A DNA stretch of 64,000 bases from Lepidodermella squamata. Its lineage: Eukaryota > Animalia > Gastrotricha. The DNA is taken from contig JBLDXI010000030.1 in the NCBI GenBank assembly GCA_047495785.1, positions 1,240,001 through 1,304,000 of the forward strand, read 5' to 3'. Positions 2,031-49,078 of the stretch are shown in pieces. The first letter of the stretch is position 1, and every line of letters begins with the position of its first letter. Under the pieces are notes generated by a model that was not told where the DNA came from, did no database searches, and saw only the letters and a list, made by a program, of their open reading frames with translations. The translations under genes were made by a program, and so were the position numbers.

Positions 2031-2066
2031 TTAGGATTAGGGATTAGGGTTAGGGTTAGGACTAGG
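2031..2066 (+). repeat. Short degenerate TTAGGG array inside an intron
   Basis: ttaggattagggattagggttagggttaggactagg. Confidence 0.8.
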
Positions 2067-3215
2067 ATTTTGATTTAACTCAGATCCACAAGTGATGTTA
2101 ATTCCACATTTTTGTTACGCAACAATGAATGTGACCCAATAAAAATACATTTTACCTGGGGTTAGCCATACCTAAGAGCCACCTGTGGTAGAATCACCCA
2201 TTCAAATGGTTTCGAAACTCAAAATTTGCACTTTTCTTTTAATCACAACTGTGTAAATCGCGAATAGTTTGTTCCAGATGACACAGTCGAAATCAATCAA
2301 AAAGGGACTTCAACGGCGATTTTTTAGTCAAATTTTATAAATTAATAGAAAAGTGTCTCGAAATGACTGGGATCTTTAGATGGATCTCGGTTTAAGGTTT
2401 AGCCTAACTTAGTAAAACTTGAGGAATATTTAAGTTAGTTTCCAACATACGCCCCAAGGGATTTCAATTTGTGAACCCAGCTCAACTTACATTGAGAGAA
2501 TTGAGATTGAAGCGTTTCCACCGTTCAACCCGAAAATGGTAAGATGTGAAACAATGTCACTTCGGAAGTTCGGCAACGTGTAGAAACAGACATTGGCATT
2601 TTTGTCGGCGGGCAGGCGGCTCAGCGAAAGCTATGAGATTTTAAAGTTTCTTCATTAAGTTATACTGGAAATGCTTCAGAGAGATTACTCTTATGAATTG
2701 TGTTTGGGGGCCTTGAAAGTAAAGTCGATAGCGAGCTACGCCCGATGCATCGAACAGTGTAGTATCACCACAGCCGGGTGCTGTCGAAGTTCCATTGAAA
2801 GGCACTGCTGTTTTTTGCGAAACAGGCGAGCTGATATCGCTACCGTAGAACTCGCCAGCATTGAGCCCTAACTTCTGCCAGTAATATGGCCCAATCGTAG
2901 TTGAGAGGCTGTCATGTATAGTGCCGTTATTCATACTCTCTTCAAGCATAATGAGTTCAACAAAATGCAATAAAAACATTAGACTAGTTAAACCTAATTT
3001 GTTCTGCCAGGCTATCACTGCATCACCGTAATTTTCAAGAATAGGCGTAAATCCGAGCCAAGCTTGCGATCCGTCGGTTTTGTATCGAACTTCAAAGTCC
3101 ATCTCGAAGCGCATTGGTTTGCCCCAGCATTGATAGCCACAAAGCTATAGTCAAAGGCAATAAATCCTCCCTTATTATCGAAGTTGAGTCGCCTATCGCC
3201 TAACGCCTAATACTG

Positions 3216-6354: not shown

Positions 6355-8718
6355 TTAAGTGAAAATTGAAATCCGTCTATTTTTCCTGAATAACGCCGAT
6401 TTAGTACAAATACCGTACGCAACCACACTAGACGTTGTTATCGAGTAAACAAGCCCACCGTAAGCCATTACGCTCTGCTGCAATGACGTCTGCGTTGACG
6501 GCACAATGAACGACGTCACAACTACGCAGGCGAATGTGAACAGCGAGTTGATGACGCACAGTCGGGCCGTCATAAATTCAGCATTCATCCCAGGCGGCGG
6601 CAGCATGCGTCGAACCTCGTAAGAAAACAACGATCCGAAAAGTAGCAGAAGTCCGTGAATAGCCAAAATAGCGCCTAGCCAATTATCTTGTCCGTTAGAT
6701 TGGCAAAACGCTGTCCCTATGTCATAATACAGATCCTGTGTAGCATCGAATGCAATTCTGGAAACTTCCAAGCCAACTGCCATGGGAGAAACGAGCAGCC
6801 ATGCTGTTAGAATCACTAAGTTGAAAAGTAGAAAAATCACTGTTCCCCAGGTGATGAACACATTTGGCCGCCATTTAAGGACAATCCTGTGAAAGGAGGC
6901 GGTAGAAAGTCTCGAGGCGACTCGATGTTCTGTATTATCTTGAACGGACCCTCTCTTGCTTTCGAAGTGGGACACGCGTCTTTGGCTGTATCTGCGTGAA
7001 TTTCGAGCATGTTGGGTTACGCGGCGCAAGGCGCTGTTCTCCCCGGACAGCTCCATCATTAAAATTCTTGCGAAGGAGTTGCCGTTCATTAGGGACACGC
7101 CAATTACAGCGATTGCAATTCTCGAATTGCACAGGATGACACTTGGGCTGTCATTCAAGTTCAAGGTAACTGAAATCACGCACGCGACATTGATTGTAAA
7201 AGCTCCTAAGAACATGAGGTGATTAGCAACCTTGTCATTATGATCCCCTCCTATGCTTTTCGCATTGATGAACATGAAAATGAACTGGATAAGGGTTACG
7301 GCAATCGCTAGGCCGAGGACAACGTAGAAAGACACGATGGGATACGAGTAGTATCTGCGAACAACTGTTGAGAGATCTTTCGGGGGTTTCTTCGACCTTG
7401 TATTCCACTCGATCGAGCTCAGTTGTTGGATTTGCATTTGATCCCCGAAAAATTCCATTCGATGGGTCAGCTTCAAAGTCCCATTGGCGAACTGAGCCGC
7501 CCAAAATGGCTCAGAGTCGTACTCTAGCCGTTTGGAATAATAGATTCGACCTGTTCTCAGGCCTCGGAAATCCGCTGCAGCAGCGCTTGAGTTCAGAACT
7601 TGACCAACTAACTCTGGTTTCTCCAAAAAGTCTCTTAGTGAAGAGCTGAAATTAGAGTTCAATCGTCGATCAGCCTTGTCTAGGGCCAGAAGTCCCGCCA
7701 TTACTGCATCGTGGCAGGTATGTCTCAGGGCATAATCGAGGTAGCGGCTCTGATTCGTAGCAACATCAAGAGCTTTGTCGAATTCTCGAAAATCATAACC
7801 AAGCTCCGATTTGCCATTCGGAACTACAGCACTGTAGAAAAATCCTACCCAATAGATTATTTTGAACTGCTCAATCAGGACTGCCGTTGGACAGCCAGGG
7901 ATTGCAACGGCGTTTGGTTGGAAAAAAGCCAGGGACGGTATCACAAAAGCGAAATTCGACCCTGTTATACCAGCCTTATAGCTCATACACAACAATTTTG
8001 CAAGCATCACAAGGTTAACTGAGGCGAAAATGACTATTCGGGAGTTCGAGTCTAGAACCTCTTGCAGAAGGTCGTTATCTATGTCCAACACCCCAGCAAA
8101 CATGGTGAATCGAAAGCCGATTTTGATACCCTCGACAAACAAAGCTTGTGACGATAGAACTTCATTCGGTTGTATTAGGTTCGTTATCACTGCACCCTCG
8201 CGCCACAAACCGACATTCCGAGCGAAATAAGCTAAGGATATGATCATTTTCTCAACGGGTGTTGCAATTTTGTACAGATTTGGGTAGTTCTTCCGATCCG
8301 CGGTGAACATTGGGCCGTTGCAACCGATCGCAAATTGAACCATGTTGAGCTCTCGAAAAATGCGACTTGTGGATTGGCAATTCACTACTGTTCCTATTAT
8401 AGCTGGTGAGAGGTAGATTCCAGATGCCATGTAGGCTTCAGAATTCTTCATGTAGCCGTCGTAGAACTGAAGGAACTGTCTCGGAGAGTCGATTGCGATA
8501 GGCCCTTCATTCACAATGCTAACATCGATGTGGTAATCGGGCAAGTACTCGGTTTGATTGTTGAAGAGGTCAACTGTTAACTTTATAGCAGCAGCACAGG
8601 TTCGGCCGTCCATAGTTTCTGGGGCAGGTCGAAATGCAAGCAATTTCAGCACATGAGGCTTTCTAACTTGGGCATCAGCTGCCATCAGGAGAAACGTGAG
8701 TTTCAAAAGCATCTTCAT
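6355..8718 (-). CDS. Intronless orphan class C GPCR, GABA-B receptor type (Venus flytrap + 7TM, no Cys-rich domain)
   Basis: 787-aa ORF with a signal peptide and VFT motifs (LPDYHI, PMFTADRKNYPNLYK resembling GABA-B PALSNRQRFPTFFR, CHDAVMA, ADFRGLRTG, IEWNTRSKKPPKD). Seven hydrophobic helices with TM3/ECL2 cysteines (LCNSR, FCQS) and AWLLVSPM at the end of TM4. Confidence 0.85.
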   Translation of the reverse strand: MKMLLKLTFLLMAADAQVRKPHVLKLLAFRPAPETMDGRTCAAAIKLTVDLFNNQTEYLPDYHIDVSIVNEGPIAIDSPRQFLQFYDGYMKNSEAYMASGIYLSPAIIGTVVNCQSTSRIFRELNMVQFAIGCNGPMFTADRKNYPNLYKIATPVEKMIISLAYFARNVGLWREGAVITNLIQPNEVLSSQALFVEGIKIGFRFTMFAGVLDIDNDLLQEVLDSNSRIVIFASVNLVMLAKLLCMSYKAGITGSNFAFVIPSLAFFQPNAVAIPGCPTAVLIEQFKIIYWVGFFYSAVVPNGKSELGYDFREFDKALDVATNQSRYLDYALRHTCHDAVMAGLLALDKADRRLNSNFSSSLRDFLEKPELVGQVLNSSAAAADFRGLRTGRIYYSKRLEYDSEPFWAAQFANGTLKLTHRMEFFGDQMQIQQLSSIEWNTRSKKPPKDLSTVVRRYYSYPIVSFYVVLGLAIAVTLIQFIFMFINAKSIGGDHNDKVANHLMFLGAFTINVACVISVTLNLNDSPSVILCNSRIAIAVIGVSLMNGNSFARILMMELSGENSALRRVTQHARNSRRYSQRRVSHFESKRGSVQDNTEHRVASRLSTASFHRIVLKWRPNVFITWGTVIFLLFNLVILTAWLLVSPMAVGLEVSRIAFDATQDLYYDIGTAFCQSNGQDNWLGAILAIHGLLLLFGSLFSYEVRRMLPPPGMNAEFMTARLCVINSLFTFACVVVTSFIVPSTQTSLQQSVMAYGGLVYSITTSSVVAYGICTKSALFRKNRRISIFT

Positions 8719-14174: not shown

Positions 14175-15475
14175 TCAATGGAAAATAAACAAAACAACCG
14201 TGGCAACGGTGAATAGAATGTAAATTGTAATTGCCGAAGCGAACGCTACGCTGTCAATGAGCACAAAGTAGGTCCACGCCCGCCCGAATACAAGTTATTT
14301 CATGCGAGCACGGTCGCTATGCAGAACGATGAATGAACACATCGCCGCGGCGTAAATAGCGCACGCCATCGCGAAGATTGTTTGGCCTAATAGATAGTAC
14401 GCAATCAAAATTTGCTGGCTTGTTTTCGGCAGGTTGTCCAACATTTGAGCTTGCAGTACGAAGATTGATAGTAGAATGGTGCAGGCGAATGAAGGCCGGT
14501 CTGGTGCTTCTGCTGGGACGTAGAATGTGCCCAGCTCCATGAGGCCGAGGATAAGGCTTGGGACGAAAAGGTTAACGATGTAATATTCAGGGAGGCGCTC
14601 GAATGTGACGCAGAAATAAGAGTCCAAGCCTTCGATGTACGTCCGGTTTGAGACGTATCGCCACACTCCGGAGTCGGGAATTTCTGGTTGAAATGCACGT
14701 GGGAAATTGAGATGGTTCACCGCTGTCTCGCTGACACTACTAGTTAGGAAAAGATCGAGACAGCACTCCTGTCTAAAATAAAATTAGTTTCAGAGTTAGG
14801 GTTAGAGCTAGGGTTAGGGTTAGGGTTAGGGTTAGGAGTATCAGAGTTGAGGTTAGGGCTAGGTTTAGAATTTAGGGTTAGAGTTAGGGTTAGAGCTAGG
14901 ATTTGAGGTTAGGGTTAGGGTTAGGGTTAGGGGTTAAAGTGTCTAAAATTGAACAAATCCTTTTTTCAATTTTTCACGAACCTGTCAAATGGAAATTTGA
15001 GATATTTCATGGAGCAGTAAAACGTCCATAACCCAGAAACAACGTGTTGAAACACTCCCGTTGGTATTGACAAGAGAAGGAACCTCGTAAAATCGTCCTT
15101 TGTTATCGAGGGCGAAATCATCGCATTTCTCAGATAGATAGTTGGGGTCCAAAATCGATCGACGTCTGTGAATCTCTTCAGTTTTGTTTCATTTGTAAGT
15201 TCTATGACTTCAGCAGCGTTTTCAACAATGCAAGGCACCTGCCAAATTGAGAAGAGTGATCCACCGAATGATAGCGACTCGGTTGTGTCGCTGATATCAA
15301 CAACGCGGCTCAGCCAAAATTCGAGGCTGATATTCGTGAATTTATTGCCTGGGCTCAGGCTATTGGCTTCGATGTCACATCTCTCGTGAAGCAGATCTGC
15401 AGCTTTTGGGCCGGAGAAGCAATGAAAAACATGAAAGCATAGGCTGACTAAAATAGATTGCGCGAGGAAAGCCAT
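14175..15475 (-). pseudogene. Two-exon Cys-loop receptor with a conventional N-terminus; in-frame TAA before M4
   Basis: Signal peptide, FWTPTI, Cys-loop CSMKYLKFPFDR|QEC, ERLPEYY, M2 PDRPSFACTILLS. TAA at 14295-14297 is followed in frame by an M4-like helix (LIDSVAFASAITIYILFTVATVVLFIFH) ending at TGA 14175-14177, then AATAAA. Confidence 0.8.
14796..14936 (+). repeat. Interstitial telomere-like (TTAGGG)n degenerate array filling most of an intron
   Basis: About 140 bp of TTAGGG/TTAGAG/CTAGGG units inside the intron that splits the Cys-loop. Confidence 0.9.
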
Positions 15476-16190
15476 CAATATTAACTTCGCGTTATTTTAA
15501 TTTTTGGTCAAATATATAGGACGCTAAAATATCTGAGATTTGCGCATAGCTTTTTAATTGAGTGAGGAATGATGGCTTGCAAACAAAAATCTGGATTTTG
15601 ATGACGCGGCCAAACATGAAAAAAAACAGGTGCGATAATCAATATCTTTCATAGTATTTTTCTCGTATGGTTTTATTTGGTTTTTTCGTGATGCAGAAAT
15701 TCTTCCGCTATTTGTTCAATCGATTTTACATTTTGAATTTTTAAATAATTTTCCTTAGTCATGTTAGTAAAAGATGGATTGTACTTTGTTGGGGTTCTTT
15801 TGGGTTCTATTCAAGCCTGTTATTTTCTCACTCCTGCCCTTTGTCGCATTCCTGAATACTCGAATTTATTGATAACGCCATTGTGAACAGATGCGAAAAC
15901 GGGCGCGCCGTTCTAATTTACGAAAAATAATTTTGAACTGCATTGGAGTGAGATATGCGCGTCCTAGTAACGTGCTCGACCCTGTTAATTGCCCCACTTA
16001 TCCGATAAATTTTAATTACGACATCTGCCGTTTTTTCCGTTGACGCGATATATAAAATCAGCAATTTCCATAATCATGAAACTGCATGAAATTCGTAGGC
16101 CGAAATTTGCCATATATCTAGATATATCGAGGGTAACAGAAAATACCAAGACCGATGCGAGGTCACAAGGCAGGGGCTAACAAATCGTTT

Positions 16191-19100
16191 TTAAAACTGG
16201 GTCATCTCAAGTTGATGATGGAAGGTGGATTCAAAGGTCTTATGAAGCAGATGAAATGTTGGCCTGTCTTTCGGGTCTTGTGACCAGCATTCAAGCATGA
16301 CTGCATACACTTCTTCCGGGCATATTTCAGGCTTTGACAAGCGAAATCCATGTGATAGGTGAATTGCAATCTCCATTGGTTGCAAATCGTCATAAGGCTC
16401 AACCTTGCAATCTATAACAAAACGATGAATTTGATTTGTATCAAATGTGAAATCAGCTTTCATCTTACTTGTGAAGATTTCCCACATGACTACGCCGAAT
16501 GACCAGACGTCGCTTTTCAGCATGAAAATTCGGCGGATAAGCGATTCAGGCGGGTGCCATCGAATAGGGACTCGGTACTCGCAAGCGTCTATAGATTGAT
16601 AGAAACCATTTTCATCCTCAACCATGCGAGACAGGCCGAAATCGGAAACTTTAGCCGTTAAGCCTTCGTCAAGCAAAATGTTACGGCAGGCCAGATCCCG
16701 ATGCATGCAGTTCTTCTCGGAAAGATACGCCATTCCAGAGCTAATCTGCCGAATGAAACGGAACCGATCTTCCAAGTTCAAAGTGCCGGCTTTTGAGACC
16801 ATGTAGTCTTTCAAAGTGCCCGAGGACATGAAAGGAACAATCAAGTTAGGTTGATCCCTCAGAATGGCTATTCCAATAAGGGGTAGGACGTTAGGGTGAT
16901 GAAAGTCCTTCATTACGTGAGCTTCTTTGATCAGCCCAGCAACGTCAGCTTTCACATCGGGTCGGATGCTTTTCACGGCTACAAGTTGATCCGGTTGATT
17001 AGGCATCCGAAGGACTGCTTTTTGAACTGCGCCGAAACTGCCGGTGCCCAGCAGATCGGTTATTTCGAGCCAATCAGAGCAGACGCTGATTCGTTCAACG
17101 AGAATTACAAGATCTTCAGCTCCGTCGAGGCCTTGAAGTAATTTCGTGAAATCAGCGAATGGCTCGACGTAGTTGTTCTCATGGACACTTCTAGCTCCAG
17201 CGACTTTATGCCTTCTACGGATCACGAAGAAAGCCAAAATTCCTAGGAGTATGACTATAACGACACTTAAAGTCGAAGCGAGAATCATACTCAGATTATC
17301 TGTGAAACAGGTTTTCAGTTAATAATAATTTTAGCTATAATCAAGGTCAACTTTTTCATATTCAATTGTATCTGCTTCAATTGTATAGTAAGGGTTATGG
17401 CTGTTGTAGTTCTTATCTGCTAAGGGACATTTTGACGTCGGCTCAATAATCAGGCTGTAAATTGCTGCCGTTGTTTTAGAATCCTCTGCAATCTCTGGAA
17501 TCAGGAGTGTGGTAGATTCATCACTAAGTTCAATGAATCTTCTATTTAAGCGATCATAGAGAGTGACAATCGCTCCAAATTGCGCGTTCATCGATGAAAT
17601 TTTCACTGTATTCTCAGTTACTTCGTAGTCGATTGCAAATTTAGAGAAAATAACTATTTCTCGAAAAACCATTTTCGTTATGCCGTTTGGTAGTATTGGC
17701 CTTAGAATATCGACACGGTTCATTCGCAATCTCAAACCTCCAAATCCCGATAAAATAACATTGAGGAAAGCTGCTGCTGTATAGGTGTGTCCCATTGCGG
17801 CAGTTCTCTTGTCAGAAATGTTTCTCCAAACAAAAAAAGGACCAGAGTTGTAGTCGGACATCAATTTTTCGAAGTCGCTTCTCGCTGATTCGATTGACGT
17901 TCGAGAGCCGAGTTGCATTTCCAGAATGGCTTTGATTGCGAGGGAAGTCGCTGGAATAGGAACTTCGGAACCGGTGGTGGAAGCGAATTTCGAAGTGTAT
18001 CTCTAAAAAAAAGAGAAAGGTTCATGAAGTTCGAACCCAGAAATTGGAGCAACAACTTACTTTGATGTCATTCTCCAGAAGGCTATATGGAGCTTGTTCA
18101 AGAAATTTGCCCGAAAAATTGTATCCAATAGGGTAGTGAGCTAGGAGAACCTCAGCTTGACTGATCGTGTCTCCGAAATTGTAACCCTCGAATTCTCTAT
18201 TACTATTCTCAGCCTTGTCGAAGGGAAAGAAGAATCTCCTCGTCACATTTTTCATCTCTTCCTCGATAAAGGAATCGCTCAAACATGCCAGATACTCGTT
18301 GAAGTGCAACGCAAGAGATGCCAGGATGTTGGTAACTAAATTTTTGCTTTGATTCTGGTGCAATTCATCAGGGCCACAAACGTCGTTGATTGAGACGTAA
18401 AAGGTGTCCTTCAGTATTTTCTTAGCAATCATTTGCGAGATCTGATCGTTTATCTGCACTATTTCCGTTAATTTACTTTTCCCTCGCGTCGCTGAATACA
18501 AAATTCGGGTTGAAAAAGATAGCAACAATTCGCTGTAGAGCGCTTGTTCGGAGCAATGATCGCACCAAGTAGGCGGTATCACCAATTCATGAGCTGTTTC
18601 GAATTTCATTAGCTTCTCCTTGTTAACTGCCTTCCAGCGATTGAGGATTAACATAGGGATTAAGTCTGGTTGCAGGAGAGCTAGAATGGGTGTGATGAAG
18701 ATTTCGGATTCGGGAGTAACATGGCCGCCGAAGTTTTGCCTCGAACCACCCCTGCCCAAGCCACACGCTGAAACGCCGGCGAAATCTGCGTCGATTCCAG
18801 CTTCATTAATAGACTGATTCATGCGTTTTTTGTACGGTATTTGGCTGTAGATATTGTAAATAGCAGAGCCTATAAGCTTGTTAATCGTGTCTGCTTGCAA
18901 TCCTGTTTTTGCAGCGAGAATTAAAAATGAACAAATTAATGATTAACGAATTTGTCAATAAGATAACCTGTAAATTTGATATCCATTTTATAAATCCTGG
19001 CCTTCCAAGATGCCAATTGCGCGATCACAAGTTCAACAGGGCTTTCCCACGTAAATCTTGTGAATTCATAGTGAGCAATGCTGTAAATTTGATCCATGGA

Positions 19101-30276: not shown

Positions 30277-33220
30277 TTATTCATAATTCAGCACGTACAA
30301 CGCATAAAGGTTGATTCCAAAGAAAAAGGCCACAGCCATAACAAAGCCGAGTGCATTCAGCAGATTCACGACTGAAATGCGTAGGCAGCCGAATTTCAGC
30401 ATCTTGTTGGCTGATTTTGCCATATCGGTCGCAATATAGCCGAGAAGCAAGTTGTAAAAGCTGACCAATCCGGTGTAGACTGACATGTAGAAAATGTACT
30501 CGGTCAACAGGATCATCGCAGCACTTTTCGGGACATCTTCCAAGACCTGATTCTGGGCAACAGTCAATGCGAGAAGGATCGTGACTACGAACATCACTCG
30601 ATCTGGCTTGTTAGCTTGCATAAGAAACGCTGCTAGTTCCAAGAATGTGAGAACCAGACAAGGACCAATGATGTTCAATAGGTAGTAGTTGGGCCTCCTT
30701 CTAAAGCTTAGTTTGAAAACAGCCACGCTGACTTTGCTTCCAATGGTCGGAGCAGACAACAGTTTGATTTCCCATTTCGTTTCCTTAGGCAGAATCTCCC
30801 ACTGGGCAACTGGGGATAGCTCATCAGGTGTTATCATATTCAGCTTGGAAAACGCTGTAAGATTGACTGAGCGATGAATGCCGAACTTGATCTCGCAGGT
30901 CTGCGTATCGAACGGGAACTTTCGCAGGTCCATGTCGCAAGTTGACTTAAACACGCCAACTCTCGACCAGTAGAACTGCATGTTAAGATACATTTCATCG
31001 AATGGCCTGATTATGAAGACGAAATCGTCCCCGAGTTGGCTATTCACCATGTAGACGTTATCAGGGCTAGATCTAAATGTCAAAGGAGGCAGCCAGTAGT
31101 CATCTTTACTTGCCACAAACACTCGAGAAGGACCGTCAACGTCAACTGGAATATCCGTCTTTTTACAAGTCGAAACGTTCCAATGCAGCTGAATGATCCC
31201 TGATAACGAAATCGTCTCACCAACCTCGTCGATCCCGAAAAATTGGTCGACCACAAAAATGGCTGAAATGGTAGTTGCACTGCCGTTGTTGGGCGGAGCG
31301 CTTCTGTCCGCAGAAAAGTCATGGCATGAGCTCTTAGCAATGTCCGAATCTCGAATTTTAGGCGTGGCGGTTTCTCCAACCAATTTGGGCATTCCTTCTT
31401 CTTTTTTCTGTTCCAAAGTTTTTTGCTGCGGTGGCGGGGCGGGGGTGGTCGTAGTAGTCGTTAGGCTAGTAGTTGTTTCGACCACTCGAGTCGTTGTAGC
31501 TGCTGTTGTATCGACTGCACCTTTCGTTGTTAGCATTGGTGACGTAGCTGCAATCGATCGTGTAGTACTATCCACAACTGCCGTAGTCGATACAACATTA
31601 GTTGTTGTCTTTAGCGACGAAGTTGAGATTGCAGCGCTCCCCGTCGTGGTTGAGATGTTAAGTTTATCTGTGAATAAGGTTTTTTTCAAACAATTCCTGA
31701 ATTGAAAGATGTTTCAATGCAACTCATTATCAGTTTGACGTAGAATCCGTTGGTTCGGTTCACGTTACTTCCAAATTGGTACTGGAGCACTTGCAACTCT
31801 CGTGCTTCGCTGGGTACGCTCGAGATCGATCCTGTCCATTTTTCTGTACTCTCGCTGTACATGTTATATAGCGTCTTATTAATCACGCCGTTTTCAAAGT
31901 CGATTGTGTTGATATAAAGATTAAATCCTCTGCCAGCTGACGTGTAGTTGAGATTTGCATATCTAGAAGAGAACAATTCAAAGTTAATAATACTCATCCA
32001 GTAGTTTCAATCACTGAAGTTGTCGATCCTCAGGTATCTTGACTCGCCACATGCATATTCTGTTGATAGTATTTAGCAGATTCGTCGGTTTCACCCCGAT
32101 CACGGCCTCTTCGAATTCCCAATCGATGGTTGCCAACGCATTGCATCCCCCGGTAATCTCGGGAAAAATCTTGGAAACAAGGCTTGATTGACCGACTGAA
32201 TCAACTTGCTCGAAATATATTTCCAAGCGAACGAAAAATGTAACTGGCGTTAATGTAACAAGCGCGGTTGAGCTTTTGCTCGTCAATGTAACGTTATTAT
32301 CAGGCCCTAGGTCGCTTGGGTAGAAAACACCGAGTGTTGGCGCTACACCCGAAAAACCTGCATCGTAGAGCTCGACGCGGACGTCATTTGTAAGCACCTT
32401 ACTACCATTGGCATGCACAACGAGCAAGTACATTTTAGAAAATGTGAGAACTTTCCCTGGGTTTGCGAAAATTCTCCACTGATTTGGCAAAGAGGACCCG
32501 ATGATGGTTACGTTGATTACTCCATTTTTCAAACCTCGAATCGTTGTTTTTTCCGCGAGGTACCATTCAGTGCTGTTGACAGTGTTGTTAGCCGTGTACT
32601 GACACGAAGGCCCGAATGATTTATCCGGGCACATACAGGCATATCCATTCCAGCACAAGCCCGTGCCACAGTTTGGAGAGCATGTGCTAGCCGCAGATGC
32701 TTGAAATGTGAAGAATTAATAAACTGGTTGTAACTTTACTCCTCTCTTACGGCTATCACAATTAGGGCCCTGGAACCCATATTTACAGTTACAGAAACCA
32801 ATCGCGTTACATGAGCCCGAATTCGGGCACCCAGCTGTTAAAGTAAATATTAAAATTGGTCATAATTTCCCATAGCCCTACAAATGCAATTAGTCGGCGG
32901 CACATCCCAGGAGCCATTGCTCAGGCATCGATGCTGGCTCGCAGGCTTGTTATTGATCAAGACCTGGATCGTGTCGTTGTAGTTATTCAGTTTATACACA
33001 TCGTCCTGGGTAATGTCTTGCCAAACGTAGGATGTGGCTGCGCTCGAACCATTCATGTACTGGTATCGAGCAAGTGCAGTTCTAAATCCCGTGCAAGTTG
33101 AGAAAGCTGAAATGTATTATGATTACGATTAAGGACAATTCTAGCGCATACTGATTTACCTGTGCAGATCAACTGCGAGAGAAGCACAAGAGAAGCAAAC
33201 GCAATATTGAAAAGCGCCAT
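30277..33220 (-). CDS. Modular Cys-loop receptor copy A: signal peptide-Sushi-like-EGF-EGF-CUB-like x2-mucin stalk-LBD-4TM
   Basis: MALFNIAFASLVLLSQLICT signal; RCLSNGSWDVPPTNC; CPNSGSCNAIGFCNCKYGFQGPNC; CSPNCGTGLCWNGYACMCPDKSFGPSC; CUB-like WRIFANPGK..LTSKSSTALV and ICMWRVKIP..GFYVKL. Then a Thr-rich stalk, YWLPP, CDMDLRKFPFDTQTC, RRRPNYY and M1-M4. Short phase-compatible introns link the exons checked. Confidence 0.8.
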
Positions 33221-33620
33221 TCCGACAAACAAAAAGCCACCGACTGCGAGAATCTGCTGGCGGATTGTGGATATCATCGCACATCTTGAGCTATTTTCGT
33301 CTTTCATCAACATGTTATTGTTTCAACGCCCACTTTGCAATATCCGCTCGGAAAAAAATTGTGCTTACAAGTTATTTGTTTTAGGTCAGTAGGCAGTGGG
33401 TAGACATTTCACATATTTGAAAAAGCGAAAAATACCGTCAGTTGGGGCTATCCGGACGGCGAAAAAAAATTACCCTCTGATTTTTTTGCATTTTTTCACG
33501 TTTCAGAAGGTCCTGATTCCAATGGAACCAGGATTCCGAATAGCTTCACGGATGGGGCTATTCGGACAGGTGTGGGGCTATTAATTATACATAAATATTC
33601 AATTCAAATATTACTAATAT

Positions 33621-34009: not shown

Positions 34010-35742
34010 TACAGAAAAACTATATATACAATGTTATATGAGTTAATATACAAGGAAGTTTCCATCCAACGCCTCGGGCCGCCGCTTTGCGCGTGCCGCC
34101 ACCCGAGGCCCAACCGCTGCCTGCATCGACGAAAATGTACAAGAAGTCCAACAACCGCCAGAGGTACCAACAACCAACAACACATCGCCTCGGGCCGCCG
34201 CTTGGTGCGTGCCGCCACCCGAGGCCCATCCGCTACCAGGATCGACGGTCACCGCCGAACTGCATCAACGATCAGCAAGCTGAGGTCCATGACTCTTAGG
34301 TTCATGTCTCAGTAGTACAATTCAATTTAAAGAATCTAGGATCTAGGACAAAAATAGAAAACATAGCCGGACTTGAACCGGGGCCTCTCACGGCACTAAA
34401 CCAAAGACGATTTAAACCGGACCCGAACCGATGCCTTTCACACACAGAGAGAATTTGAAAAGAACTAAAGGGACTAGAGAAAGATATAAGATACAAGAGA
34501 GGAACCCAGAGGGAACCTACTGCGCACGGATTGCAGCTATCCGCCGCTAGTCAGGAACCGGAAAGGCCCGGCCGCGCAGGGAGCGATGTTACCTTGCACC
34601 GCCACCCACAACGAACCGGTCCTCCCCGCGACAAGCTGCGCTCGGGCCGTTGCTTCCGTGGACCGCCACCCGCCGCTGGCTAGCCGCCTCTAACACCCGA
34701 CAGTAACCTAAACAGCTAAAATCGTAGGGAGTCGATCATCTGACGTTCGAATAGCCGGTAGAGGACCAGCGCCCAGAAGATGGTCAAGAAAGAAACGAAC
34801 CGGCGATTTACTCTCCGGAATGGGCCTATCGCGACTCTGGCGAACTATTCCGCCTAGCACACTACCTGCTTCGAGCGCCCTGTTGAAACAATGGAACGAC
34901 AAGCTGGACAAACGGTCTTGGATTACTTGGAAGTCGGGAAACGTCGCCTGCAGTCGCCGCTGATAAAGTTGATCCGGGCACCGACGGGGGAGCCCCAAGA
35001 TGATCTTGAGGGCCCGCCTCTCTAGGACCGCCAGTGTTTCGATATACTGTGGCTTCGAGTTAGCGAACGCCGGGGCACCGAATTCTAACAACGGCCTGAT
35101 TACGCTCTTGTAAAACAAGAGGCCCAAGGTGGGGTGGGTCTTGACTTTTCCGCGAAAAAGAGCGAAAATACGAGGGAGAGCTCGGGACGACACGTGTTGT
35201 AAGTGAGGCGTCCAGCATAGGTGCTTGGACAGCCAAACGCCCAGATATTTGAATTCCTGAACCCTTGGCAAGCAAATGCCGCCTAGCTGGAGCTGACCAG
35301 CTGTGTGATTTACATTGGCGCCGAATGCGACCCACTCGCACTTCCTCGGGTTCAGGTCTAGTCTCCAACGCTGAGACCAGCGTTCTGTGACCCGAAGTGC
35401 CGCTTGGACACGAGCAGTTGCAAGTGGGGCCGGTCGCCCAGTAGCCCATACAGCCTGGTCGTCGGCGTATGCCGCCGCGGCAGTTCTCTTTAGTGCGTCG
35501 TCCTTGTCTACCTCCGCTGGGAGGGACGAAGATGTGTAGATTATGCAGAGTATCGGGGATAATGGTGATCCCTGAGGGACTCCGCAAGCTACCTCGACAT
35601 CCTCACTAAAGCTGTCCCCTACTCTGACTCGCATACGCCTGTCGCGTAGAAAATCGGATATCCATCGCACAACGGCCACGGGTAGGCCGAGGCCTTTTAA
35701 AACCATGCGTAAACCGTTGTGCAGTCTTTCCAGCTTATTCAA
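34010..35742 (-). mobile_element. 5'-truncated non-LTR retrotransposon (Jockey/I-like RT C-terminal half plus 3' UTR)
   Basis: Uninterrupted ORF 34708-35742: GVPQGSPLSP, YADD, LNPRKCE, FKYLGV, FYKSVIRPLLEFG. The 3' boundary is approximate. Confidence 0.85.
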
Positions 35743-43667: not shown

Positions 43668-46537
43668 TCATTCGTACTTGAGAACGTACAACGCATATAG
43701 GTTGATTCCAAAGAAAAAGGCCACAGCCATAACAAAGCCGAGTGCATTCAGCAGATTCACGACTGAAATGCGTAGGCAGCCGAATTTCAGCATCTTGTTG
43801 GCTGATTTTGCCATATCGGTCGCAATATAGCCGAGAAGCAAGTTGTAAAAGCTGACCAATCCGGTGTAGACTGACATGTAGAAAATGTACTCGGTCAAAA
43901 GGATCATCGCAGCACTTTTCGGGACATCTTCCAAGACCTGATTCTGGGCAACAGTCAATGCGAGAAGGATCGTGACTACAAACATCACTCGATCTGGCTT
44001 GTTAGCTTGCATAAGAAACGCTGCTAGTTCCAAGAATGTGAGAACCAGACAAGGACCAATGATGTTCAATAGGTAGTAGTTGGGCCTCCTTCTAAAGCTT
44101 AGTTTGAAAACAGCCACGCTGACTTTGCTTCCAATGGTCGGAGCAGACAACAGTTTGATTTCCCATTTCGTTTCCTTAGGCAGAATCTCCCACTGGGCAA
44201 CTGGGGATAGCTCATCAGGTGTTATCATATTCAGCTTGGAAAACGCTGTAAGATTGACTGAGCGATGAATGCCGAACTTGATCTCGCAGGTCTGCGTATC
44301 GAACGGGAACTTTCGCAGGTCCATGTCGCAAGTTGACTTGAACACGCCAACTCTCGACCAGTAGAACTGCATGTTAATATACATTTCATCGAATGGCCTG
44401 ATTATAAAGACGAAGTCGTCCCCCAGTTGGCTATTCACCATATAGACGTTATCAGGGCTAGATCTAAATGTCAAAGGAGGCAGCCAGTAGTCTTCTTTAC
44501 TTGCCACAAACACTCGAGAAGGGCCATCAATGTCGACTGGAATATCCGTCTTTTTACAAGTCGAAACGTTCCAATGCAGTTGGATGATCCCTGATAACGA
44601 AATCGTCTCAGCAACCTCGTCGATCCCGAAGAATTGGTCGACCACAAAAATGGCTGAAATGTTAGTTGCACTGCCGTTGTTGGGCGGGGCGCTTCTGTCA
44701 GCTGAAAAGTCGTGACATGAGCTCTTCGCAATGTCCGAATCTCGAATTTTAGGCGTGGCTGTTTCTTTGGCTAACTGGGGCATCGCAGCTTCTGCCTTCT
44801 GCTCCACAGAGAGTTTTTGTGGGGGCGGGGCAGGGGTGGTCGTAGTAGTTGTTGGACTAGTCGTTGTTTCGATCGCTCGAGTTGTGGTTGGAGCTGTAGT
44901 TGAATCGACTGCACGATTCGTTGTTTGCATTGGTGACGTTGTAATAGATCGTGGCGTAGTATCTGCAACTGCCCCAGTCGATGCAATATCGGTTGTTGGC
45001 TGTGAAGTCGGACTATTCGATGCAATGACGGTCGTGGCTGGGGTCTTTGACATTGTACTGGTCAGAAGGGGCGAAGTTGCAGGTGTTGTTGACCTTGTAG
45101 TTGGACTATTCGTCGCCATGACAGTCGGTATATTCGTGGTTGAGGCCTTTGAGGTTGTACTCGTCTGAAGGGATGAAGTTGAGGTTGCGACGCTTGATAT
45201 CGTGCTGGTTGTTGAAATGTTCAGTTTGACTGTAAATATGCTCTTATTAAGCGCATGATAATGAAAAATAATTTCCAAACGCAACTCATTTTCAACTTCA
45301 GATAGAACCCATGACTTTGATTGAACGAACTTCCTCTCGGATGAAAAAAGACATAGATCTCTCGCGTGTCGCTAGATATGGTTGACATCGGTCCTGGAGA
45401 TAATTCCTCCTTATTTTCTCTGGTATCAACGTTGAAAAGCTTCGAATAAACTGTCCCTTTTTCGTAGTTGATTGTGTTAAGCTCAAGATATATCCCTCGG
45501 TCGCGAGTAATCGTGTAGTTGAGAAGAGAATATCTGAAAAAAGAGAAATTGACAGTCGTTACTATTCATTTGGTTTGTAATTAATCACTGAAGTTGTCGA
45601 TCCTCAGGTATCTTGACTCGCCATAAGCACTGCCTGTTGATAGTATCGAACTGAATCATCGGCCTCACCCCGATCACGGCCTCTTCGAATTCCCAATCGA
45701 TGGTTGTGAACGCATTGCATATTCCAACTATCTTAGGAAAAATCTTCGTACCAAGGCTTGATTGATCTGTTGCATCGACTTGCTCGAAATAGATTTCCAA
45801 CCGCATGTAAAGTACGACTTCAATCGAGGAGAATGTAACAAGCGCAGATGAGCTTTTGCTCGTTAATGTGACATTATTATCCGGCCCTAGGTCGCTTGGG
45901 TAGAAAACACCGAGTGTTGGCGCTACACCCGAAAAACCTGCATCGTAGAGCCCGACGCGGGCATCATTTCGGATCTTCCCATCAGAATCAACGACGCGCA
46001 AGTACATTTTAGAAAATGTGAGGGCTTTCCCTGGGTCTGCGAAAATTCTCCACTGATTTGACTGATAACCGGCGAAGATAGTGATGTTGATTAGTCCATT
46101 CTTCAAACCTCGAATAGTTGTCTTCTCCAGAAGATACCAATCGATGCTGTTGATTGTGTTGTTAGCCGTGTACTGACATGATGGCCCGAATGATTTATCC
46201 GGACACATACAGGTAAATCCATTCCAGCACAAGCCCGTGCCACAGTTTGGCGAACATGTACTAGCCGGCGATGCTTGAAATTTGACAAATTTATAAAAAT
46301 TTCCTAACTTTGTTTCGCTCTTACGACTATCGCAATTAGGGCCCTGGAACCCATATTTGCAGTTACAGAAACCAGTCGCGTTACATGAGCCCTGATTCGA
46401 GCAACTACCCGGGCAAGTCGATAAAGCTGAAATATATTATTATTACGATTAAGGACAATTCTAACGCATAGCGCACCTGTGCAGATCCACTGCGAGAGAA
46501 GCACGAGAGAAGCAAACGCAATATTGAAAAGCGCCAT
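43668..46537 (-). CDS. Modular Cys-loop receptor copy B: signal peptide-EGF-EGF-CUB-like x2-longer mucin stalk-LBD-4TM (no Sushi-like segment)
   Basis: Exon layout parallels 30277-33220. The first EGF reads CPGSCSNQGSCNATGFCNCKYGFQGPNC. The channel part is almost identical to copy A; no lesion seen. Confidence 0.8.
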
Positions 46538-48135
46538 TCCGACAAACAAAAAGCCACCGACTGCGAGAATCTGCTGGCGGATTGTGGATATCATCGCACA
46601 TCTTGAGCTATTTTTGCCTTTCATCAACGTGTTTTTGTTTCAACGCCCACTTTGCAATTTCCTATCGGGAAAAAAACAAGGGCTTGCAATTGATTGCTCC
46701 CCCGATATCAGCAACCCCGCTATCTGCCCACCCCCGTTAGTAGTCATCGATTTGTTGACCCTGCTAAATAAACTTGTAGAAAATTCCTAATTAAACAAAA
46801 ACTAATTATCTGATAGATTAAGAAAATTAAGTATAAAAAATTTGCGTTCCTGGCAACCTAGCGGCGCGTTGTCGTGGTTTTGAGAGATCTTTTTCGGATC
46901 CAGATATTTCAAGTTCAGTTAAAACGAGTTGAACAGCGCATTAAGCTGTTTTCGTGGTTTTGAAATGACTTTGATTATGCAACAGAGTGTGTGGATTAGC
47001 TGCACTCAAGTCGTGCTGCGAGTCGTCCTGTTTTTTCATCCCTAATTCATCATAAATTCTGCCAGTTCATCGTAAGAAAATCAGCAATTGATTTCTATAC
47101 CTCTACCTATTACAATTTCCATCCATCTCCTTGCTGTGCAAATTATTCCCGAGGTAGCTTGCTCATCAACTATTCACCCATCTGAATTGCCTTGATTTTT
47201 CATGTTTTCGAGTTTTCCCTGCTAAACAAATCGTGAACTGAATAGGAACAGTGGCAACAGTGGGACACCTGGGTTCTCATTTAAAATTTAAAAAATCTAA
47301 AAACCTGGAAGCTTCTGGAGCCTTATGGAGGCTGCTCATGGGTTTGATTAAAGTGATGATGTTACGTTTCGGGATTAATAGTACATGCTTCTGGTAGATG
47401 CCGATGGTCTTATTGAGCTATCGGTTAATTCGAGGTTGCTGTTTTGGTTAGTTTATCTTTTACTCTTTCGTTTTGGCGTTATTCGCTAGTCATTGATTAA
47501 ATAAATAGAATAAATAAATAAAATAATTTCGACGCAATCCGTGTTCTTCTTGCTGCATACGTGTTCTTGTGCCCACAATTTTCACACTGCAATATTTAAT
47601 CCCGATTTTCTTATTGAGTGTCATCGTCTGAACAGCTGCCCGGGGATATAACAGCGTATACCGGCAAATTAGGCGCTTAAAACTGGGGCAATTTCATAAT
47701 AAATAGTCATAATAAATGCATCCCAATTGCACTACAACCAAGCGCATTTGCCTCGCGCTCCTGTTATGCGTATATATTGGACATAGAGGAGGAAATAAGT
47801 TGAAAAACCGAACATATAATGACCGAGCCGAAGGCGAGGACATTATTTGTGAGGTTTTTCAACATATTTACGACTCTAAGTCCAATATTTGCATATACCC
47901 CGAGGCATAGTAGCATCTACTGAATGTCAGGGCTCCGTTGAAATACATACCCCCCATGTTGCAAGGGTTTCAATTAATAAAATATTAGAAAAATAAAAGA
48001 TCCAACTTAATTGTTTCATAAAAAATCGGGCTTTTCGCCATTTTTGAATCAAACGCTCATTCTGTCGATTTTCGTTTTGATTTTCACTCGCCATTTTGCT
48101 GCCGGATCGTCCTATCAATTTGGCTTTACTGTACA

Positions 48136-49078
48136 ATGGCTCAACCAGATCAACCTTCTACATCACGTGGTAGCAGGTTCGTTCACAGCAATGATCATCA
48201 AGACCTGACTAAACTAAGCATGATGAGCAACACTTGGAAGAAAATGAACACAGCTTTGGGCCTGTATGCCAAATGGGTGGAACGATGTTGCGGCGAAAGA
48301 TTCCTCAATCGTGCCTGTCGATGCTCGCGACTTGAAAGATCTTCCGAAAAACATTCTGGCAGATCAGGTAGCTTTGCCTGTTTTTTTTATTTTCCTTGTC
48401 GATTTTTGTTTTCATGGCAGGTTTCGATGTTTGTTCTTGCTCTGAGGAAGGATGAAGAAACACTCTACCCGCTGAAAACTGTGTCCGAGTATGTCGACAT
48501 GTTGCAACGGTATTTGAAGGAGAATGGTGTCCAATTTGTGTATCGTTCGGATGTCCAATTCAGAAAGGTGGTTCAGGCGCTTAATCTCTACGGCAAGAAG
48601 GGCAACGATGCAGGGGTAAACAAGCCCGTAAGGCAGTCGGATGAATTGCCGATAGAGATCGAACGTGAAATGTTCAGCTTGGGGATTCTTGGGCGGTCTA
48701 ATCCACGATTGCTGTTACGAACAATTGGATATTTGATCGGTATTCGCGTTGCTTCTCGCGGCGGGGGCGAACTGAGGTCGTTCGAACACCGTCACGTAAA
48801 GAGAATGGAAACTACAAATGGTCGGCCATATTTCCTGATGACGATTCCTCCATCCAAAACTACGCACACCAGCCTTCGAAACCTGCATTCTAAGATTACG
48901 GAATTCAAAATATTTCCGACACCGAATGCAGGCGAGAGATGCCTCTTCTCGCTCTTGGAACTCTACTTATCGAAGGTTCCCAATCGCGCCGAAACTAGTT
49001 GGTTCTTCCGCCAATCGATAGCCAACCCCGCCGATCCGGATGTATGGTACATGAAAACGGCAGCCGGACGGCACAAGC
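48136..49078 (+). mobile_element. Crypton-like (DUF3504/ZMYM-type) tyrosine recombinase, interrupted and 3'-truncated
   Basis: FVLALRK..E..YP..T, LQRYL, GILGRSNPRLL, ASRGGGELRSF, CLFSLLELYLSKVP, WYMKTAAGRHK(L). It continues only a few nt beyond the P element (52885-52889). Confidence 0.7.

What the first reader, a model, noticed from the sequence alone, without database searches (positions are those of the whole stretch)
30277..33220. Pentameric ligand-gated channels with EGF/CUB/Sushi modules on a mucin stalk
Seen: short phase-compatible introns link a signal peptide, Sushi-like, two EGF and two CUB-like domains and a long Thr-rich stalk to a complete Cys-loop LBD and M1-M4 (copies at 30277-33220 and 43668-46537; fragment at 52889-54459). 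Established: animal pLGIC subunits normally start with the LBD right after the signal peptide, and CUB or Sushi proteins (LEV-10, LEV-9, NETO, SOL-1) act on ionotropic receptors as separate polypeptides. Inference: these channels carry a covalently fused auxiliary or adhesion module displayed five-fold above the glycocalyx. That suggests gating or clustering by protein, matrix or surface contact, or tethered mechanosensing.
Basis: partly seen in the sequence, partly recalled or inferred. Interest (0 to 1): 0.88.

Follow-up and report, generated by a model that had tools for sequence, protein, structure and literature searches.

The report
Ion channel with built-in adhesion-type modules
Two intact, transcribed genes of an unidentified animal encode neurotransmitter-receptor-type (Cys-loop) ion-channel subunits. 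Each carries a long extra outer arm of EGF and CUB-like modules on a mucin-like stalk, a layout that the channel literature describes only for bacteria.

Summary
On the minus strand, six exons (33313..30277) joined by five GT-AG introns of 47-56 nt give one 925-aa reading frame. It runs: hydrophobic leader, Cys-rich Sushi-like module, two EGF modules, two beta-rich CUB-like modules, an 80-aa Thr-rich stalk, then a complete Cys-loop ligand-binding domain and M1-M4.

- **Transcripts:** cDNA contigs of a public run carry three of the five introns spliced out at exactly the predicted sites. One contig links the CUB-like exons to the stalk exon.
- **Second copy:** copy B (46624..43668, 914 aa) is intact but lacks the Sushi-like module. 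All parts show dN/dS below 1. The channel cores are 98-99% identical, while the outer modules have diverged.
- **Third piece:** it is a broken fragment.
- **Relatives:** in one well-supported split of the channel tree, many unnamed metagenome proteins have 180-744-aa N-terminal extensions (Laminin_G_3, EGF, Thr/Ser-rich linkers) in single ORFs.
- **Literature:** current papers say such N-terminal domains occur only in prokaryotic channels.

Not shown: the CUB and Sushi folds (Pfam silent, AlphaFold failed, language-model leads only), introns 1-2 in cDNA, and any function.

This scan already noted the same class (LamG-, lectin- and SRCR-fused channels) on other pieces of this genome. Verdict: a new variant of a known kind.

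The parts
33160..33313 (-). Copy A exon 1: start codon (33313, or Met32 at 33220) and a hydrophobic leader (residues about 19-56). It is either a signal peptide or a signal anchor.
   Evidence: An in-frame TGA lies 12 nt upstream of the ATG. cDNA-run depth falls to 0 upstream of 33303 while the DNA run stays at 138.
32882..33106 (-). Copy A exon 2 (phase 1-1): Cys-rich 'Sushi-like' module with 3 Cys and a C..NGSW..P..C ending. Its last Cys serves as the first Cys of EGF1.
   Evidence: No Pfam hit. Atlas neighbours are Sushi/Sushi_2 clusters at 0.88, with recognition below threshold. The module is absent from copy B.
32751..32834 (-). Copy A exon 3 (phase 1-1): EGF module 1.
   Evidence: Six-Cys pattern. 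Pfam EGF_laminin 0.0042 and EGF_2 0.0049, both below cut-off. The donor at 32751 is joined to 32699 in cDNA.
32602..32682 (-). Copy A EGF module 2 (start of exon 4), pattern C-x3-C-x4-C-x5-C-x-C-x8-C.
   Evidence: It matches the EGF of relative P0017 (local phmmer E 1.7e-6 in a 295-protein set).
32203..32598 (-). Copy A beta-rich module 1 ('CUB-like 1', no Cys, 5 N-glycosylation sequons).
   Evidence: Atlas neighbours for this part alone are CUB clusters at 0.92/0.91; 62 of 100 hits are in the CUB set. The low-confidence models show only beta strands. Pfam and PDB sequence searches are negative. dN/dS is 0.29.
32015..32157 (-). Copy A 'CUB-like 2', first half (end of exon 4), with C340..C370-x-W-x-V.
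   Evidence: The exon end at 32015 is joined to 31962 in cDNA contigs of two runs.
31724..31962 (-). Copy A exon 5: 'CUB-like 2', second half, ending in GFYVKL.
   Evidence: It is covered whole by cDNA contig 12, which is spliced on both sides. It is only 39% identical to copy B, yet the frame is kept and dN/dS is 0.35.
31426..31667 (-). Copy A start of exon 6: Thr-rich mucin-like stalk (80 aa, T 35%, T+S+P 54%).
   Evidence: The acceptor at 31667 is joined to 31724 in cDNA.
31327..31425 (-). Copy A charged linker between the stalk and the channel.
30685..31326 (-). Copy A ligand-binding domain. It includes the clade motif C-HDFS..APPNN and the Cys-loop at 30939-30895.
   Evidence: Pfam PF02931 9.5e-12. 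PDB phmmer best hits are nAChR subunits, E 2.8e-21. Clade alignment.
30277..30684 (-). Copy A transmembrane domain M1-M4 with a short M3-M4 loop, plus the stop codon at 30277-30279.
   Evidence: Pfam PF02932 at 26.7 bits against a 28.1 cut-off. PDB alignments run through M3. Hydrophobic windows. Alignment.
46477..46624 (-). Copy B exon 1 (leader). The first ATG of copy A reads ACG here, and the next ATG is used.
46325..46426 (-). Copy B fused exon: 19 nt of exon 2 joined in frame to EGF1. The Sushi-like module and intron 2 are gone.
45589..46273 (-). Copy B exon with EGF2, CUB-like 1 and the first half of CUB-like 2.
   Evidence: 77% identical to copy A.
45286..45533 (-). Copy B exon with the second half of CUB-like 2 (9 nt longer than in copy A).
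43668..45229 (-). Copy B last exon: 137-aa Thr/Ser-rich stalk, LBD and M1-M4, plus the stop codon.
   Evidence: The channel part is 98-99% identical to copy A.
54040..54315 (-). Fragment C, stalk remnant (69% identical to copy A, with a copy B-like stalk).
52891..52988 (-). Fragment C, short LBD remnant (residues 655-688 of copy A). About 1 kb of unrelated DNA separates it from the stalk piece.

Best explanation
Shown: copies A and B are real, transcribed, selectively maintained genes. Each encodes one polypeptide in this order:
- a leader;
- a Cys-rich module (copy A only);
- two EGF modules;
- two beta-rich CUB-like modules;
- an 80-137-aa Thr/Ser/Pro-rich stalk;
- a complete Cys-loop channel subunit with a very short M3-M4 loop.

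They belong to a clade of eukaryotic pLGICs in which interchangeable extracellular recognition modules (EGF/CUB-like here; Laminin_G_3, EGF and other unnamed domains in relatives) sit in front of the ligand-binding domain, often on a Thr/Ser-rich linker.

Inferred: the subunits form pentamers. The stalk is O-glycosylated and extended, so five module arrays are held tens of nanometres from the channel body.

The arrays most likely act as built-in recognition or anchoring arms. They would bind matrix, cell-surface or glycan partners and so place, cluster or load the channel. This would replace the cytoplasmic-loop scaffolding and the separate CUB/CCP partners that classical receptors use.

Opening itself would still be driven through the channel's own extracellular domain, by an unknown non-cholinergic stimulus. 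The pore has an acidic -1' ring (PDR) and Glu at 20', as in cation channels, but Pro at -2', as in anion channels. Selectivity is therefore open.
For: Gene model and transcripts:
- The model has five GT-AG introns and an open frame.
- cDNA joints lie exactly at introns 3, 4 and 5, and one contig spans the end of exon 4, all of exon 5 and 181 nt of exon 6.
- cDNA-run depth stops near 33300 while DNA depth continues.

Selection and history:
- Copy B is intact, with the same splice sites despite 39% identity in exon 5.
- dN/dS is 0.2-0.5 in the modules and stalk, and 0.05-0.07 in the channel.
- A homogenised tract of 93-100% identity is confined to 31300-30301.

Channel identity:
- Pfam LBD and TMD hits.
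- PDB matches to nAChR subunits.

Relatives:
- Relatives with N-terminal signal peptides and 180-744-aa extensions lie in single ORFs. They carry Laminin_G_3 (6e-16), EGF_2 and Thr/Ser-rich linkers.
- All 14 rows with extensions of at least 150 aa fall in one split with SH-aLRT 98.
- The clade shares motifs and short M3-M4 loops.

Module labels:
- Language-model neighbours are CUB/EGF and Sushi.
Against: - Introns 1 and 2 lack cDNA support.
- The spliced contigs carry a few mismatches and a 6-nt insertion, so they may come from a near-identical paralogue or allele rather than from copy A itself.
- Pfam finds no CUB or Sushi domain, and both AlphaFold runs failed (pLDDT 35 and 39).
- There are no data on assembly, glycosylation, localisation or currents.
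- A long flexible stalk argues against tight allosteric coupling, but it does not tell anchoring from force transmission.
- The leader might be an uncleaved anchor, which would tie both ends of the arm to the membrane.
Confidence: 0.55

Rival explanations
1. Auxiliary subunit in cis. The EGF/CUB-like array folds back on the channel's own extracellular domain and controls assembly, surface delivery or gating kinetics. This is what LEV-10, SOL-1/2 and NETO do in trans, and what the DeCLIC N-terminal domain does in a bacterial channel.
For: CUB ectodomains of LEV-10, SOL-1 and NETO act directly on ionotropic receptors (PMC9083331). The DeCLIC N-terminal domain modulates gating (PMC9897478 and bioRxiv 10.1101/2025.02.24.640012). 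The modules are under purifying selection.
Against: 80-137 residues of Thr/Ser/Pro-rich stalk plus a charged linker separate the array from the LBD. Relatives use unrelated modules (Laminin_G_3, EGF) in the same position, which fits outward-facing recognition better than a conserved intramolecular contact. The modules diverge fast while the channel core is homogenised.
Confidence: 0.18
2. Contact- or force-gated channel. Binding of the arm to a matrix, surface or particle pulls on the stalk, which enters the top of the LBD, and this opens the pore. That would be a new gating mode for the family.
For: The classical agonist box is degenerate: the loop B Trp is replaced by His or a gap, and loop C has no aromatic residues and no Cys pair. 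The arm is attached at the N-terminal helix of the LBD. The genome holds many such channels with varied recognition modules (unchecked notes).
Against: No precedent in pLGICs. Mucin-like linkers are compliant. Loop B carries a clade-conserved Arg and the rest of the ECD is under very strong constraint, which suggests a small-ligand or ion site is still in use.
Confidence: 0.12
3. The arm is a pro-region or trafficking tag removed after biosynthesis, so the mature channel is conventional.
For: LEV-9 needs proteolytic cleavage for function (PMC9083331). The charged linker between stalk and LBD could hold a protease site.
Against: No dibasic or furin-type motif is seen in the linker (sequence). 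A 500-aa multi-module, heavily glycosylated pro-region kept under purifying selection, and swapped for other recognition modules in relatives, would be a costly tag.
Confidence: 0.08
4. Artefact: separate neighbouring genes, or decaying pseudogenes, joined by my gene model.
For: Introns 1-2 are not seen in cDNA. One nearby family member has an in-frame stop and one copy is a fragment.
Against: Spliced cDNA contigs cross the module-to-stalk junction. The channel exon has no leader of its own. Two diverged copies keep frame and splice sites with dN/dS below 1. Single-ORF relatives have the same layout.
Confidence: 0.03

Closest known systems
Animal Cys-loop receptors of the cationic nAChR / 5-HT3 branch
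   Same: LBD fold signature, C-x13-C Cys-loop with FPFD, pre-M1 RRxP, M1-M4, Leu 9', an acidic -1' ring and Glu 20'. The best PDB sequence matches are nAChR delta, alpha6, alpha7 and beta2.
   Different: - About 560 extra N-terminal residues of modules and stalk.
- Loop B Trp replaced by His or a gap.
- Loop C has no aromatic residues and no Cys-Cys pair.
- Pro at -2'.
- An M3-M4 loop of about 15-20 residues instead of a long cytoplasmic domain.
- An extra conserved Cys pair (C-HDFS and W-x-V-x-T-C).
Prokaryotic pLGICs with an N-terminal domain (DeCLIC type)
   Same: An extra domain lies N-terminal to the ligand-binding domain, and the M3-M4 loop is short (PMC9897478; bioRxiv 10.1101/2025.02.27.640520).
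   Different: The genes here are eukaryotic and spliced, and the channel has a true Cys-loop. The extra part is an array of animal-type modules (EGF, CUB-like) on a mucin-like stalk, not two compact lobes packed on the ECD. No sequence similarity of the arms was found. Those papers state that such domains are a prokaryotic feature.
CUB/CCP partners of ionotropic receptors (LEV-10, LEV-9, SOL-1/2, Neto/NETO1-2)
   Same: CUB- and CCP-type extracellular modules associated with ligand-gated channels for clustering or gating control (PMC9083331).
   Different: Those are separate polypeptides (type I membrane or secreted proteins). Here the modules are covalently part of the channel subunit. Their CUB/CCP identity is not proven, and they are spaced from the channel by a mucin-like stalk.
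Unnamed metagenome-derived pLGICs with N-terminal extensions (P0002, P0016, P0017, P0021-P0023, P0025, P0026, P0028, P0036, P0047, P0169)
   Same: Same channel clade (33-37% identity, SH-aLRT 98 split), the same C-DHFS..APPNN motif and short M3-M4 loop, N-terminal signal peptide, extra domains, and often a Thr/Ser-rich linker.
   Different: Their extra domains are Laminin_G_3/ConA-like, a single EGF, or unrecognised. None resembles the CUB-like modules here. Those examined are carried in single Prodigal-called ORFs on very gene-dense contigs.

Membership tests
Pentameric ligand-gated ion channel (Cys-loop receptor) superfamily | Extracellular ligand-binding beta-sandwich domain (Pfam PF02931) | tested here: met
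   PF02931 at E 9.5e-12, 45.2 bits against a cut-off of 26. phmmer against PDB gives 195 pLGIC chains, best E 2.8e-21.
Pentameric ligand-gated ion channel (Cys-loop receptor) superfamily | Cys-loop: two Cys 13 residues apart, with the FPFD core | tested here: met
   CDMDLRKFPFDTQTC at residues 706-720, window 30939-30895.
Pentameric ligand-gated ion channel (Cys-loop receptor) superfamily | Four transmembrane helices M1-M4, with M2 lining the pore (Leu 9') | tested here: met
   PF02932 at 26.7 bits, just under the 28.1 cut-off. PDB alignments run through M1-M3. The clade alignment includes M4. Hydrophobic windows.
Pentameric ligand-gated ion channel (Cys-loop receptor) superfamily | Assembly into pentamers and gating by a ligand | not testable with these tools
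   Needs expression, electrophysiology or cryo-EM.
Nicotinic acetylcholine receptor subfamily | Aromatic box (loop B Trp, loop C Tyr residues) and, in alpha subunits, the loop C Cys-Cys pair | tested here: not met
   HMMER alignments to alpha6 and alpha7 put KFGIHRS opposite KFGSWTY/KFGSWSY. Loop C reads LLSAPTIGSK, with no aromatic residue and no CC pair.
CUB domain | Match to the CUB profile (PF00431) | tested here: not met
   No CUB hit at E up to 10 for exon 4 or exon 5. No PDB sequence hit with the A+B profile.
CUB domain | About 110-residue beta-sandwich fold | tested here: inconclusive
   AlphaFold gave pLDDT 35 (single sequence) and 39 (two-sequence alignment), with only beta strands predicted. 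Atlas neighbours for module 1 alone are CUB clusters at 0.92/0.91, with 163 shared features, under the 170 guide value.
CUB domain | Conserved disulfides (first pair C..about 26-30..C-x-W) | tested here: inconclusive
   Module 2 has C340 and C370, followed by x-W-x-V. Module 1 has no Cys. The consensus is from my own knowledge.
EGF-like domain | Six Cys in EGF spacing within 30-40 residues | tested here: met
   Both modules have the spacing. Pfam EGF_laminin 0.0042 and EGF_2 0.0049 for EGF1, below the cut-offs.
Sushi / CCP domain | Four Cys and a conserved Trp in about 60 residues; profile match | tested here: not met
   Only three Cys, plus the C..NGSW..P..C ending. No Pfam hit. Atlas neighbours are Sushi/Sushi_2 at 0.88, with recognition under threshold.
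Mucin-like (PTS) domain | Long stretch rich in Thr/Ser/Pro | tested here: met
   Copy A: 80 aa, T+S+P 54%. Copy B: 137 aa, 61%. O-glycosylation itself is not testable here.
Prokaryotic N-terminal-domain pLGICs (DeCLIC type) | Extra domain N-terminal to the ECD in a Pro-loop, prokaryotic channel | tested here: not met
   The extra N-terminal part is present, but the gene is spliced and eukaryotic and has a Cys-loop. It works like this group in layout only.
Auxiliary CUB/CCP proteins of ionotropic receptors (LEV-10, LEV-9, SOL-1, NETO) | Separate polypeptide that binds the receptor | tested here: not met
   The modules are in the same reading frame and transcript as the channel.

The most novel reading that the evidence does not exclude
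These genes are part of a large family of ionotropic receptors for macromolecules or surfaces. Binding of a protein, glycan, matrix or particle by the outer modules would be converted, through tension or clustering of the five stalks, into opening of a Cys-loop pore. That is a gating mode unknown in this superfamily, and a new kind of fast contact, immune or chemosensory receptor.
Probability: 0.12. Interest if true: 0.95.

Novelty: new variant of a known kind. Interest (0 to 1): 0.77.

Why it matters
Textbooks and current structural papers treat the eukaryotic Cys-loop subunit as signal peptide, ligand-binding domain and M1-M4 with a cytoplasmic loop. They treat extra N-terminal domains as a prokaryotic peculiarity.

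Here an animal genome carries expressed subunits in which adhesion- or recognition-type modules are part of the channel, and the cytoplasmic loop is almost absent. In other animals the same kinds of modules work as separate clustering or auxiliary proteins.

This gives a natural system in which to ask:
- how extracellular scaffolds control pLGIC placement and gating;
- whether a pLGIC can be driven by macromolecular or mechanical inputs;
- how exon shuffling plus gene conversion builds a receptor repertoire with a constant channel core and variable outer modules.

It also shows that a whole clade of such channels sits unnamed in metagenome data.

Tried and rejected
Searches and models that led nowhere:
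- Pfam scans of each N-terminal exon at E up to 10 gave no CUB or Sushi hit.
- A word-indexed protein search with exon 4 gave no hit.
- A JGI metagenome scan with the A+B exon-4 profile matched 392 patterns, none confirmed.
- A PDB sequence search with that profile gave nothing.
- AlphaFold on exon 4 alone and on EGF2 plus module 1 with the A+B alignment gave pLDDT 35 and 39. I therefore ran no fold search, because it would be meaningless.
- The two CUB-like modules are not detectably similar to each other (z 0.7), so they could not serve as each other's alignment.
- A local phmmer of the whole arm against all fetched relatives matched only the EGF of P0017.
- Rfam found nothing in the window.

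Organism identity:
- A tyrosine-kinase query gave about 30-45% identity to many bilaterians and to metagenome proteins, so it is uninformative.
- The nearest named channel relatives are bivalve gene models.
- The window's own proteins are not in the databases.

Readings rejected:
- Separate genes or a pseudogene: rejected on the spliced cDNA and dN/dS.
- An acetylcholine receptor: rejected because the binding-site residues are not conserved.

I could not hand the spliced 925-aa protein to the remote tools, because no reference exists for a spliced product. All remote searches therefore used single exons.
Full report
**What is in the sequence.** All the pieces lie on the minus strand. Reading 33450 to 31600 and joining the open frames at GT-AG sites gives six exons: 33313-33160, 33106-32882, 32834-32751, 32699-32015, 31962-31724 and 31667-30277. 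The introns are 47-56 nt long with phases 1,1,1,2,1, and the frame is 925 aa and unbroken. An in-frame stop lies 12 nt before the first ATG.

The order of parts is:
- leader;
- a Cys-rich exon, the 'Sushi-like' module;
- EGF1, which is its own phase 1-1 exon;
- EGF2;
- a 130-aa Cys-free beta-rich module;
- a second beta-rich module, split by intron 4;
- an 80-aa stalk with 35% Thr;
- a charged linker;
- the ligand-binding domain, then M1-M4 (coordinates checked).

The stalk and the whole channel are one exon, so that link needs no splicing inference. The channel exon has no leader of its own.

**Transcript evidence.** A public run (X2) holds near-identical contigs and carries a SMART cDNA adapter in a loose end. 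It shows joints at 32699/32751, 31962/32015 and 31667/31724, each skipping CT..AC on the plus strand, which is GT..AG on the gene's strand. These are exactly introns 3, 4 and 5 of the model. A second run (X3) also shows intron 4.

One 512-nt contig runs from the end of exon 4 through all of exon 5 into 181 nt of the stalk exon. The stated refutation, that module exons and channel exon are separate transcripts, therefore fails for the module-to-stalk junction.

X2 depth is 0 upstream of 33303 while the DNA run has 138 there. That serves as an internal silent-stretch control and places the 5' end near exon 1.

Two limits remain. Introns 1 and 2 are not seen in the contigs. The spliced contig has a 6-nt insertion and a few mismatches, so it may come from an allele or a close paralogue.

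**Second copy, fragment and selection.** Copy B (46624-43668) has the same splice sites and gives an intact 914-aa frame. It lacks the Sushi-like module: 69 codons and intron 2 are missing, and the frame is preserved. Its stalk is 137 aa.

Nei-Gojobori comparison of A and B:

| Region | dN/dS |
|---|---|
| EGF modules | 0.20 |
| Beta-rich module 1 | 0.29 |
| Beta-rich module 2 | 0.35-0.52 |
| Stalk | 0.31 |
| LBD | 0.07 |
| TMD | 0.05 |

Every part is therefore constrained as coding sequence. Synonymous divergence is very uneven: 0.03 in exon 1, 0.3-0.45 in EGF and module 1, 1.4 in exon 5, and 0.07-0.13 in the channel.

Nucleotide identity is 93-100% from 31300 to 30301, including 400 nt in windows that round to 100%. 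It then drops to 74% just past the stop codon. I read this as gene conversion or recent recombination homogenising the channel core while the outer modules diverge.

Summed DNA-run depth is several-fold higher over the channel part than over exon 5 and the stalk. This fits several near-identical cores in the genome, but the tool warns that this depth is not a copy number.

The third copy is only a stalk remnant (54315-54040) and a 33-aa LBD remnant (52988-52891), with unrelated DNA between them.

**Identity of the modules.** The channel is certain:
- Pfam Neur_chan_LBD at 9.5e-12; Neur_chan_memb at 26.7 bits, just below its cut-off;
- 195 PDB pLGIC sequences matched, the best being nAChR delta, alpha6, alpha7 and beta2;
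- a C-x13-C Cys-loop with FPFD.

The two EGF modules have the six-Cys spacing. EGF1 gets sub-threshold EGF_laminin and EGF_2 hits.

The CUB and Sushi labels are not proven. Pfam gives nothing even at E 10, and the PDB sequence search gives nothing. Two AlphaFold runs stayed at pLDDT 35 and 39, showing only beta strands.

The leads in their favour are as follows:
- Protein-language-model neighbours of exon 4 are all CUB/EGF families (0.88).
- For module 1 alone they are CUB clusters (0.92/0.91, with 62 of 100 hits in the CUB set).
- For exon 2 they are Sushi clusters (0.88, below the recognition threshold).
- Module 2 has two Cys 30 residues apart followed by x-W-x-V, and it ends in GFYVKL. Both resemble the CUB consensus as I know it.

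The arm carries 13 of copy A's 16 N-glycosylation sequons, as expected for an extracellular region.

**Channel core.** In HMMER alignments to nAChR alpha6 and alpha7, the loop B Trp is replaced by His or a gap, and loop C has no aromatic residues and no Cys pair. This is not a cholinergic site.

M2 begins P-D-R where cation channels have G-E-K. That keeps the acidic -1' ring and Glu 20', but adds the -2' Pro typical of anion channels, so selectivity cannot be read from sequence.

The M3-M4 loop is only about 15-20 residues. A clade alignment shows conserved C-(D/H)HFS..APPNN before the LBD, W-x-V-x-T-C after beta2, an Arg in loop B, and PDR/PER.

**Relatives.** The window's proteins are not in the searched databases.
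- An exhaustive HMMER search with the channel core found 4735 hits. The closest reach 37% identity.
- In my own count from that table, about a dozen of the best 30 have the channel at the C-terminal end of a 534-1099-aa protein.
- The 20 of the best hits I looked up are, apart from two bivalve gene models, unnamed proteins from ENA metagenome assemblies.
- The long ones I read (P0017, P0025, P0047) start with signal peptides and are single ORFs on very gene-dense contigs.
- Pfam finds Laminin_G_3 in P0047 (6e-16), and more weakly in P0025 and P0023. It finds a weak, sub-threshold EGF_2 match in P0017.
- Five have Thr/Ser-rich linkers.
- In a quick maximum-likelihood tree of 60 cores, all 14 rows with extensions of at least 150 aa lie in one 27-row split (SH-aLRT 98), and none lies among the other 33. 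Several 'short' rows in that split are ORFs cut inside the LBD.

The layout is thus a property of a clade, not of one gene model. The modules are interchangeable.

**Earlier notes of this scan.** Notes on other pieces of the same genome describe Cys-loop channels fused to LamG/pentraxin-like, L-type-lectin-like and SRCR domains, some on mucin-like stalks. Two follow-ups reached the same 'only known in bacteria' conclusion. I did not check those loci.

**Literature.** The DeCLIC papers state that N-terminal domains are 'not found in eukaryotic relatives' (bioRxiv 10.1101/2022.05.06.490775). [quoted passage not shown]

The 2016 inventory of pLGICs across life does not mention N-terminal domains at all (PMC4795631). 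Four full-text searches for a CUB-, EGF- or LamG-fused Cys-loop channel found none.

The review PMC9083331 confirms that LEV-9 (CCP), LEV-10, SOL-1/2 and Neto/NETO (CUB) are separate polypeptides that cluster or tune ionotropic receptors.

**How it most likely works.**

*Shown:* one expressed polypeptide with recognition-type modules, a mucin-like spacer and a complete channel; strong constraint on the core; faster change and module loss in the arm.

*Inferred:* the subunits form pentamers, and the glycosylated stalk is extended. At roughly 0.25 nm per residue, 80-137 residues give tens of nanometres.

The arms would then bind external partners. With almost no cytoplasmic loop to hold scaffolds, extracellular anchoring, clustering or ligand capture is the most economical role. 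Gating would remain in the ECD and be driven by an unknown, non-cholinergic stimulus. I give this 0.55.

The rivals are:
- a cis-acting auxiliary or modulatory arm (0.18);
- contact or force gating (0.12);
- a cleaved pro-region (0.08);
- an artefact (0.03).

**Verdict.** The function is open, and the CUB and Sushi names are provisional. It is a new variant of a known kind, of high interest to channel biologists.

Noticed in passing
window 98-5800, minus strand: Another family member, only 28% identical in the LBD. It has a long Thr/Ser-rich stalk (ORF 1285-1995), and upstream ORFs (2641-3114, 4891-5175, 5394-5792) hold repeated modules that Pfam does not recognise. In this assembly it has an in-frame TAG at 1285-1287, where the family has the Trp of 'FYW'. 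A 300-nt insert flanked by inverted repeats (about 480-780) sits inside the M1-M2 region. It is probably a pseudogene.
   Followed up: partly
window 14295-15478, minus strand: A conventional Cys-loop subunit: the signal peptide is followed directly by the LBD, with no extra modules. It lies in the same cluster as the fused genes.
   Followed up: partly
window 16194-18900 and 55261-57804, minus strand: Two tyrosine-kinase genes (Pfam PK_Tyr_Ser-Thr, 4e-76 and 5e-75). Their kinase exon starts with a transmembrane helix. On the same strand it is preceded by ORFs with weak Glyco_hydro_65m matches. These may be receptor kinases with a glycoside-hydrolase-like ectodomain.
   Followed up: no
window 6358-8718 and 59689-62092, minus strand: Class C GPCR genes (ANF_receptor plus 7tm_3) flank the channel cluster. 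Together with the kinase genes, they suggest a duplicated receptor-rich block.
   Followed up: no
window 34711-35742, 48136-49080, 50069-51877: Transposon remains lie between the channel copies: a reverse transcriptase, a DUF3504 protein, and a THAP9/P-element-like transposase (TNP-like domains).
   Followed up: no
L001 341-2435; L002 2843-5456: On the metagenome contigs, P0002 seems to have an upstream signal-peptide exon (ORF 341-634). Two pLGIC genes sit in tandem on L002, so the relatives are clustered too.
   Followed up: partly
P0014 (Mactra antiquata gene model, 987 aa): It has four FPxD Cys-loop cores spaced 194 residues apart in one predicted protein. This could be a merged tandem array or mutually exclusive exons.
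   Followed up: no
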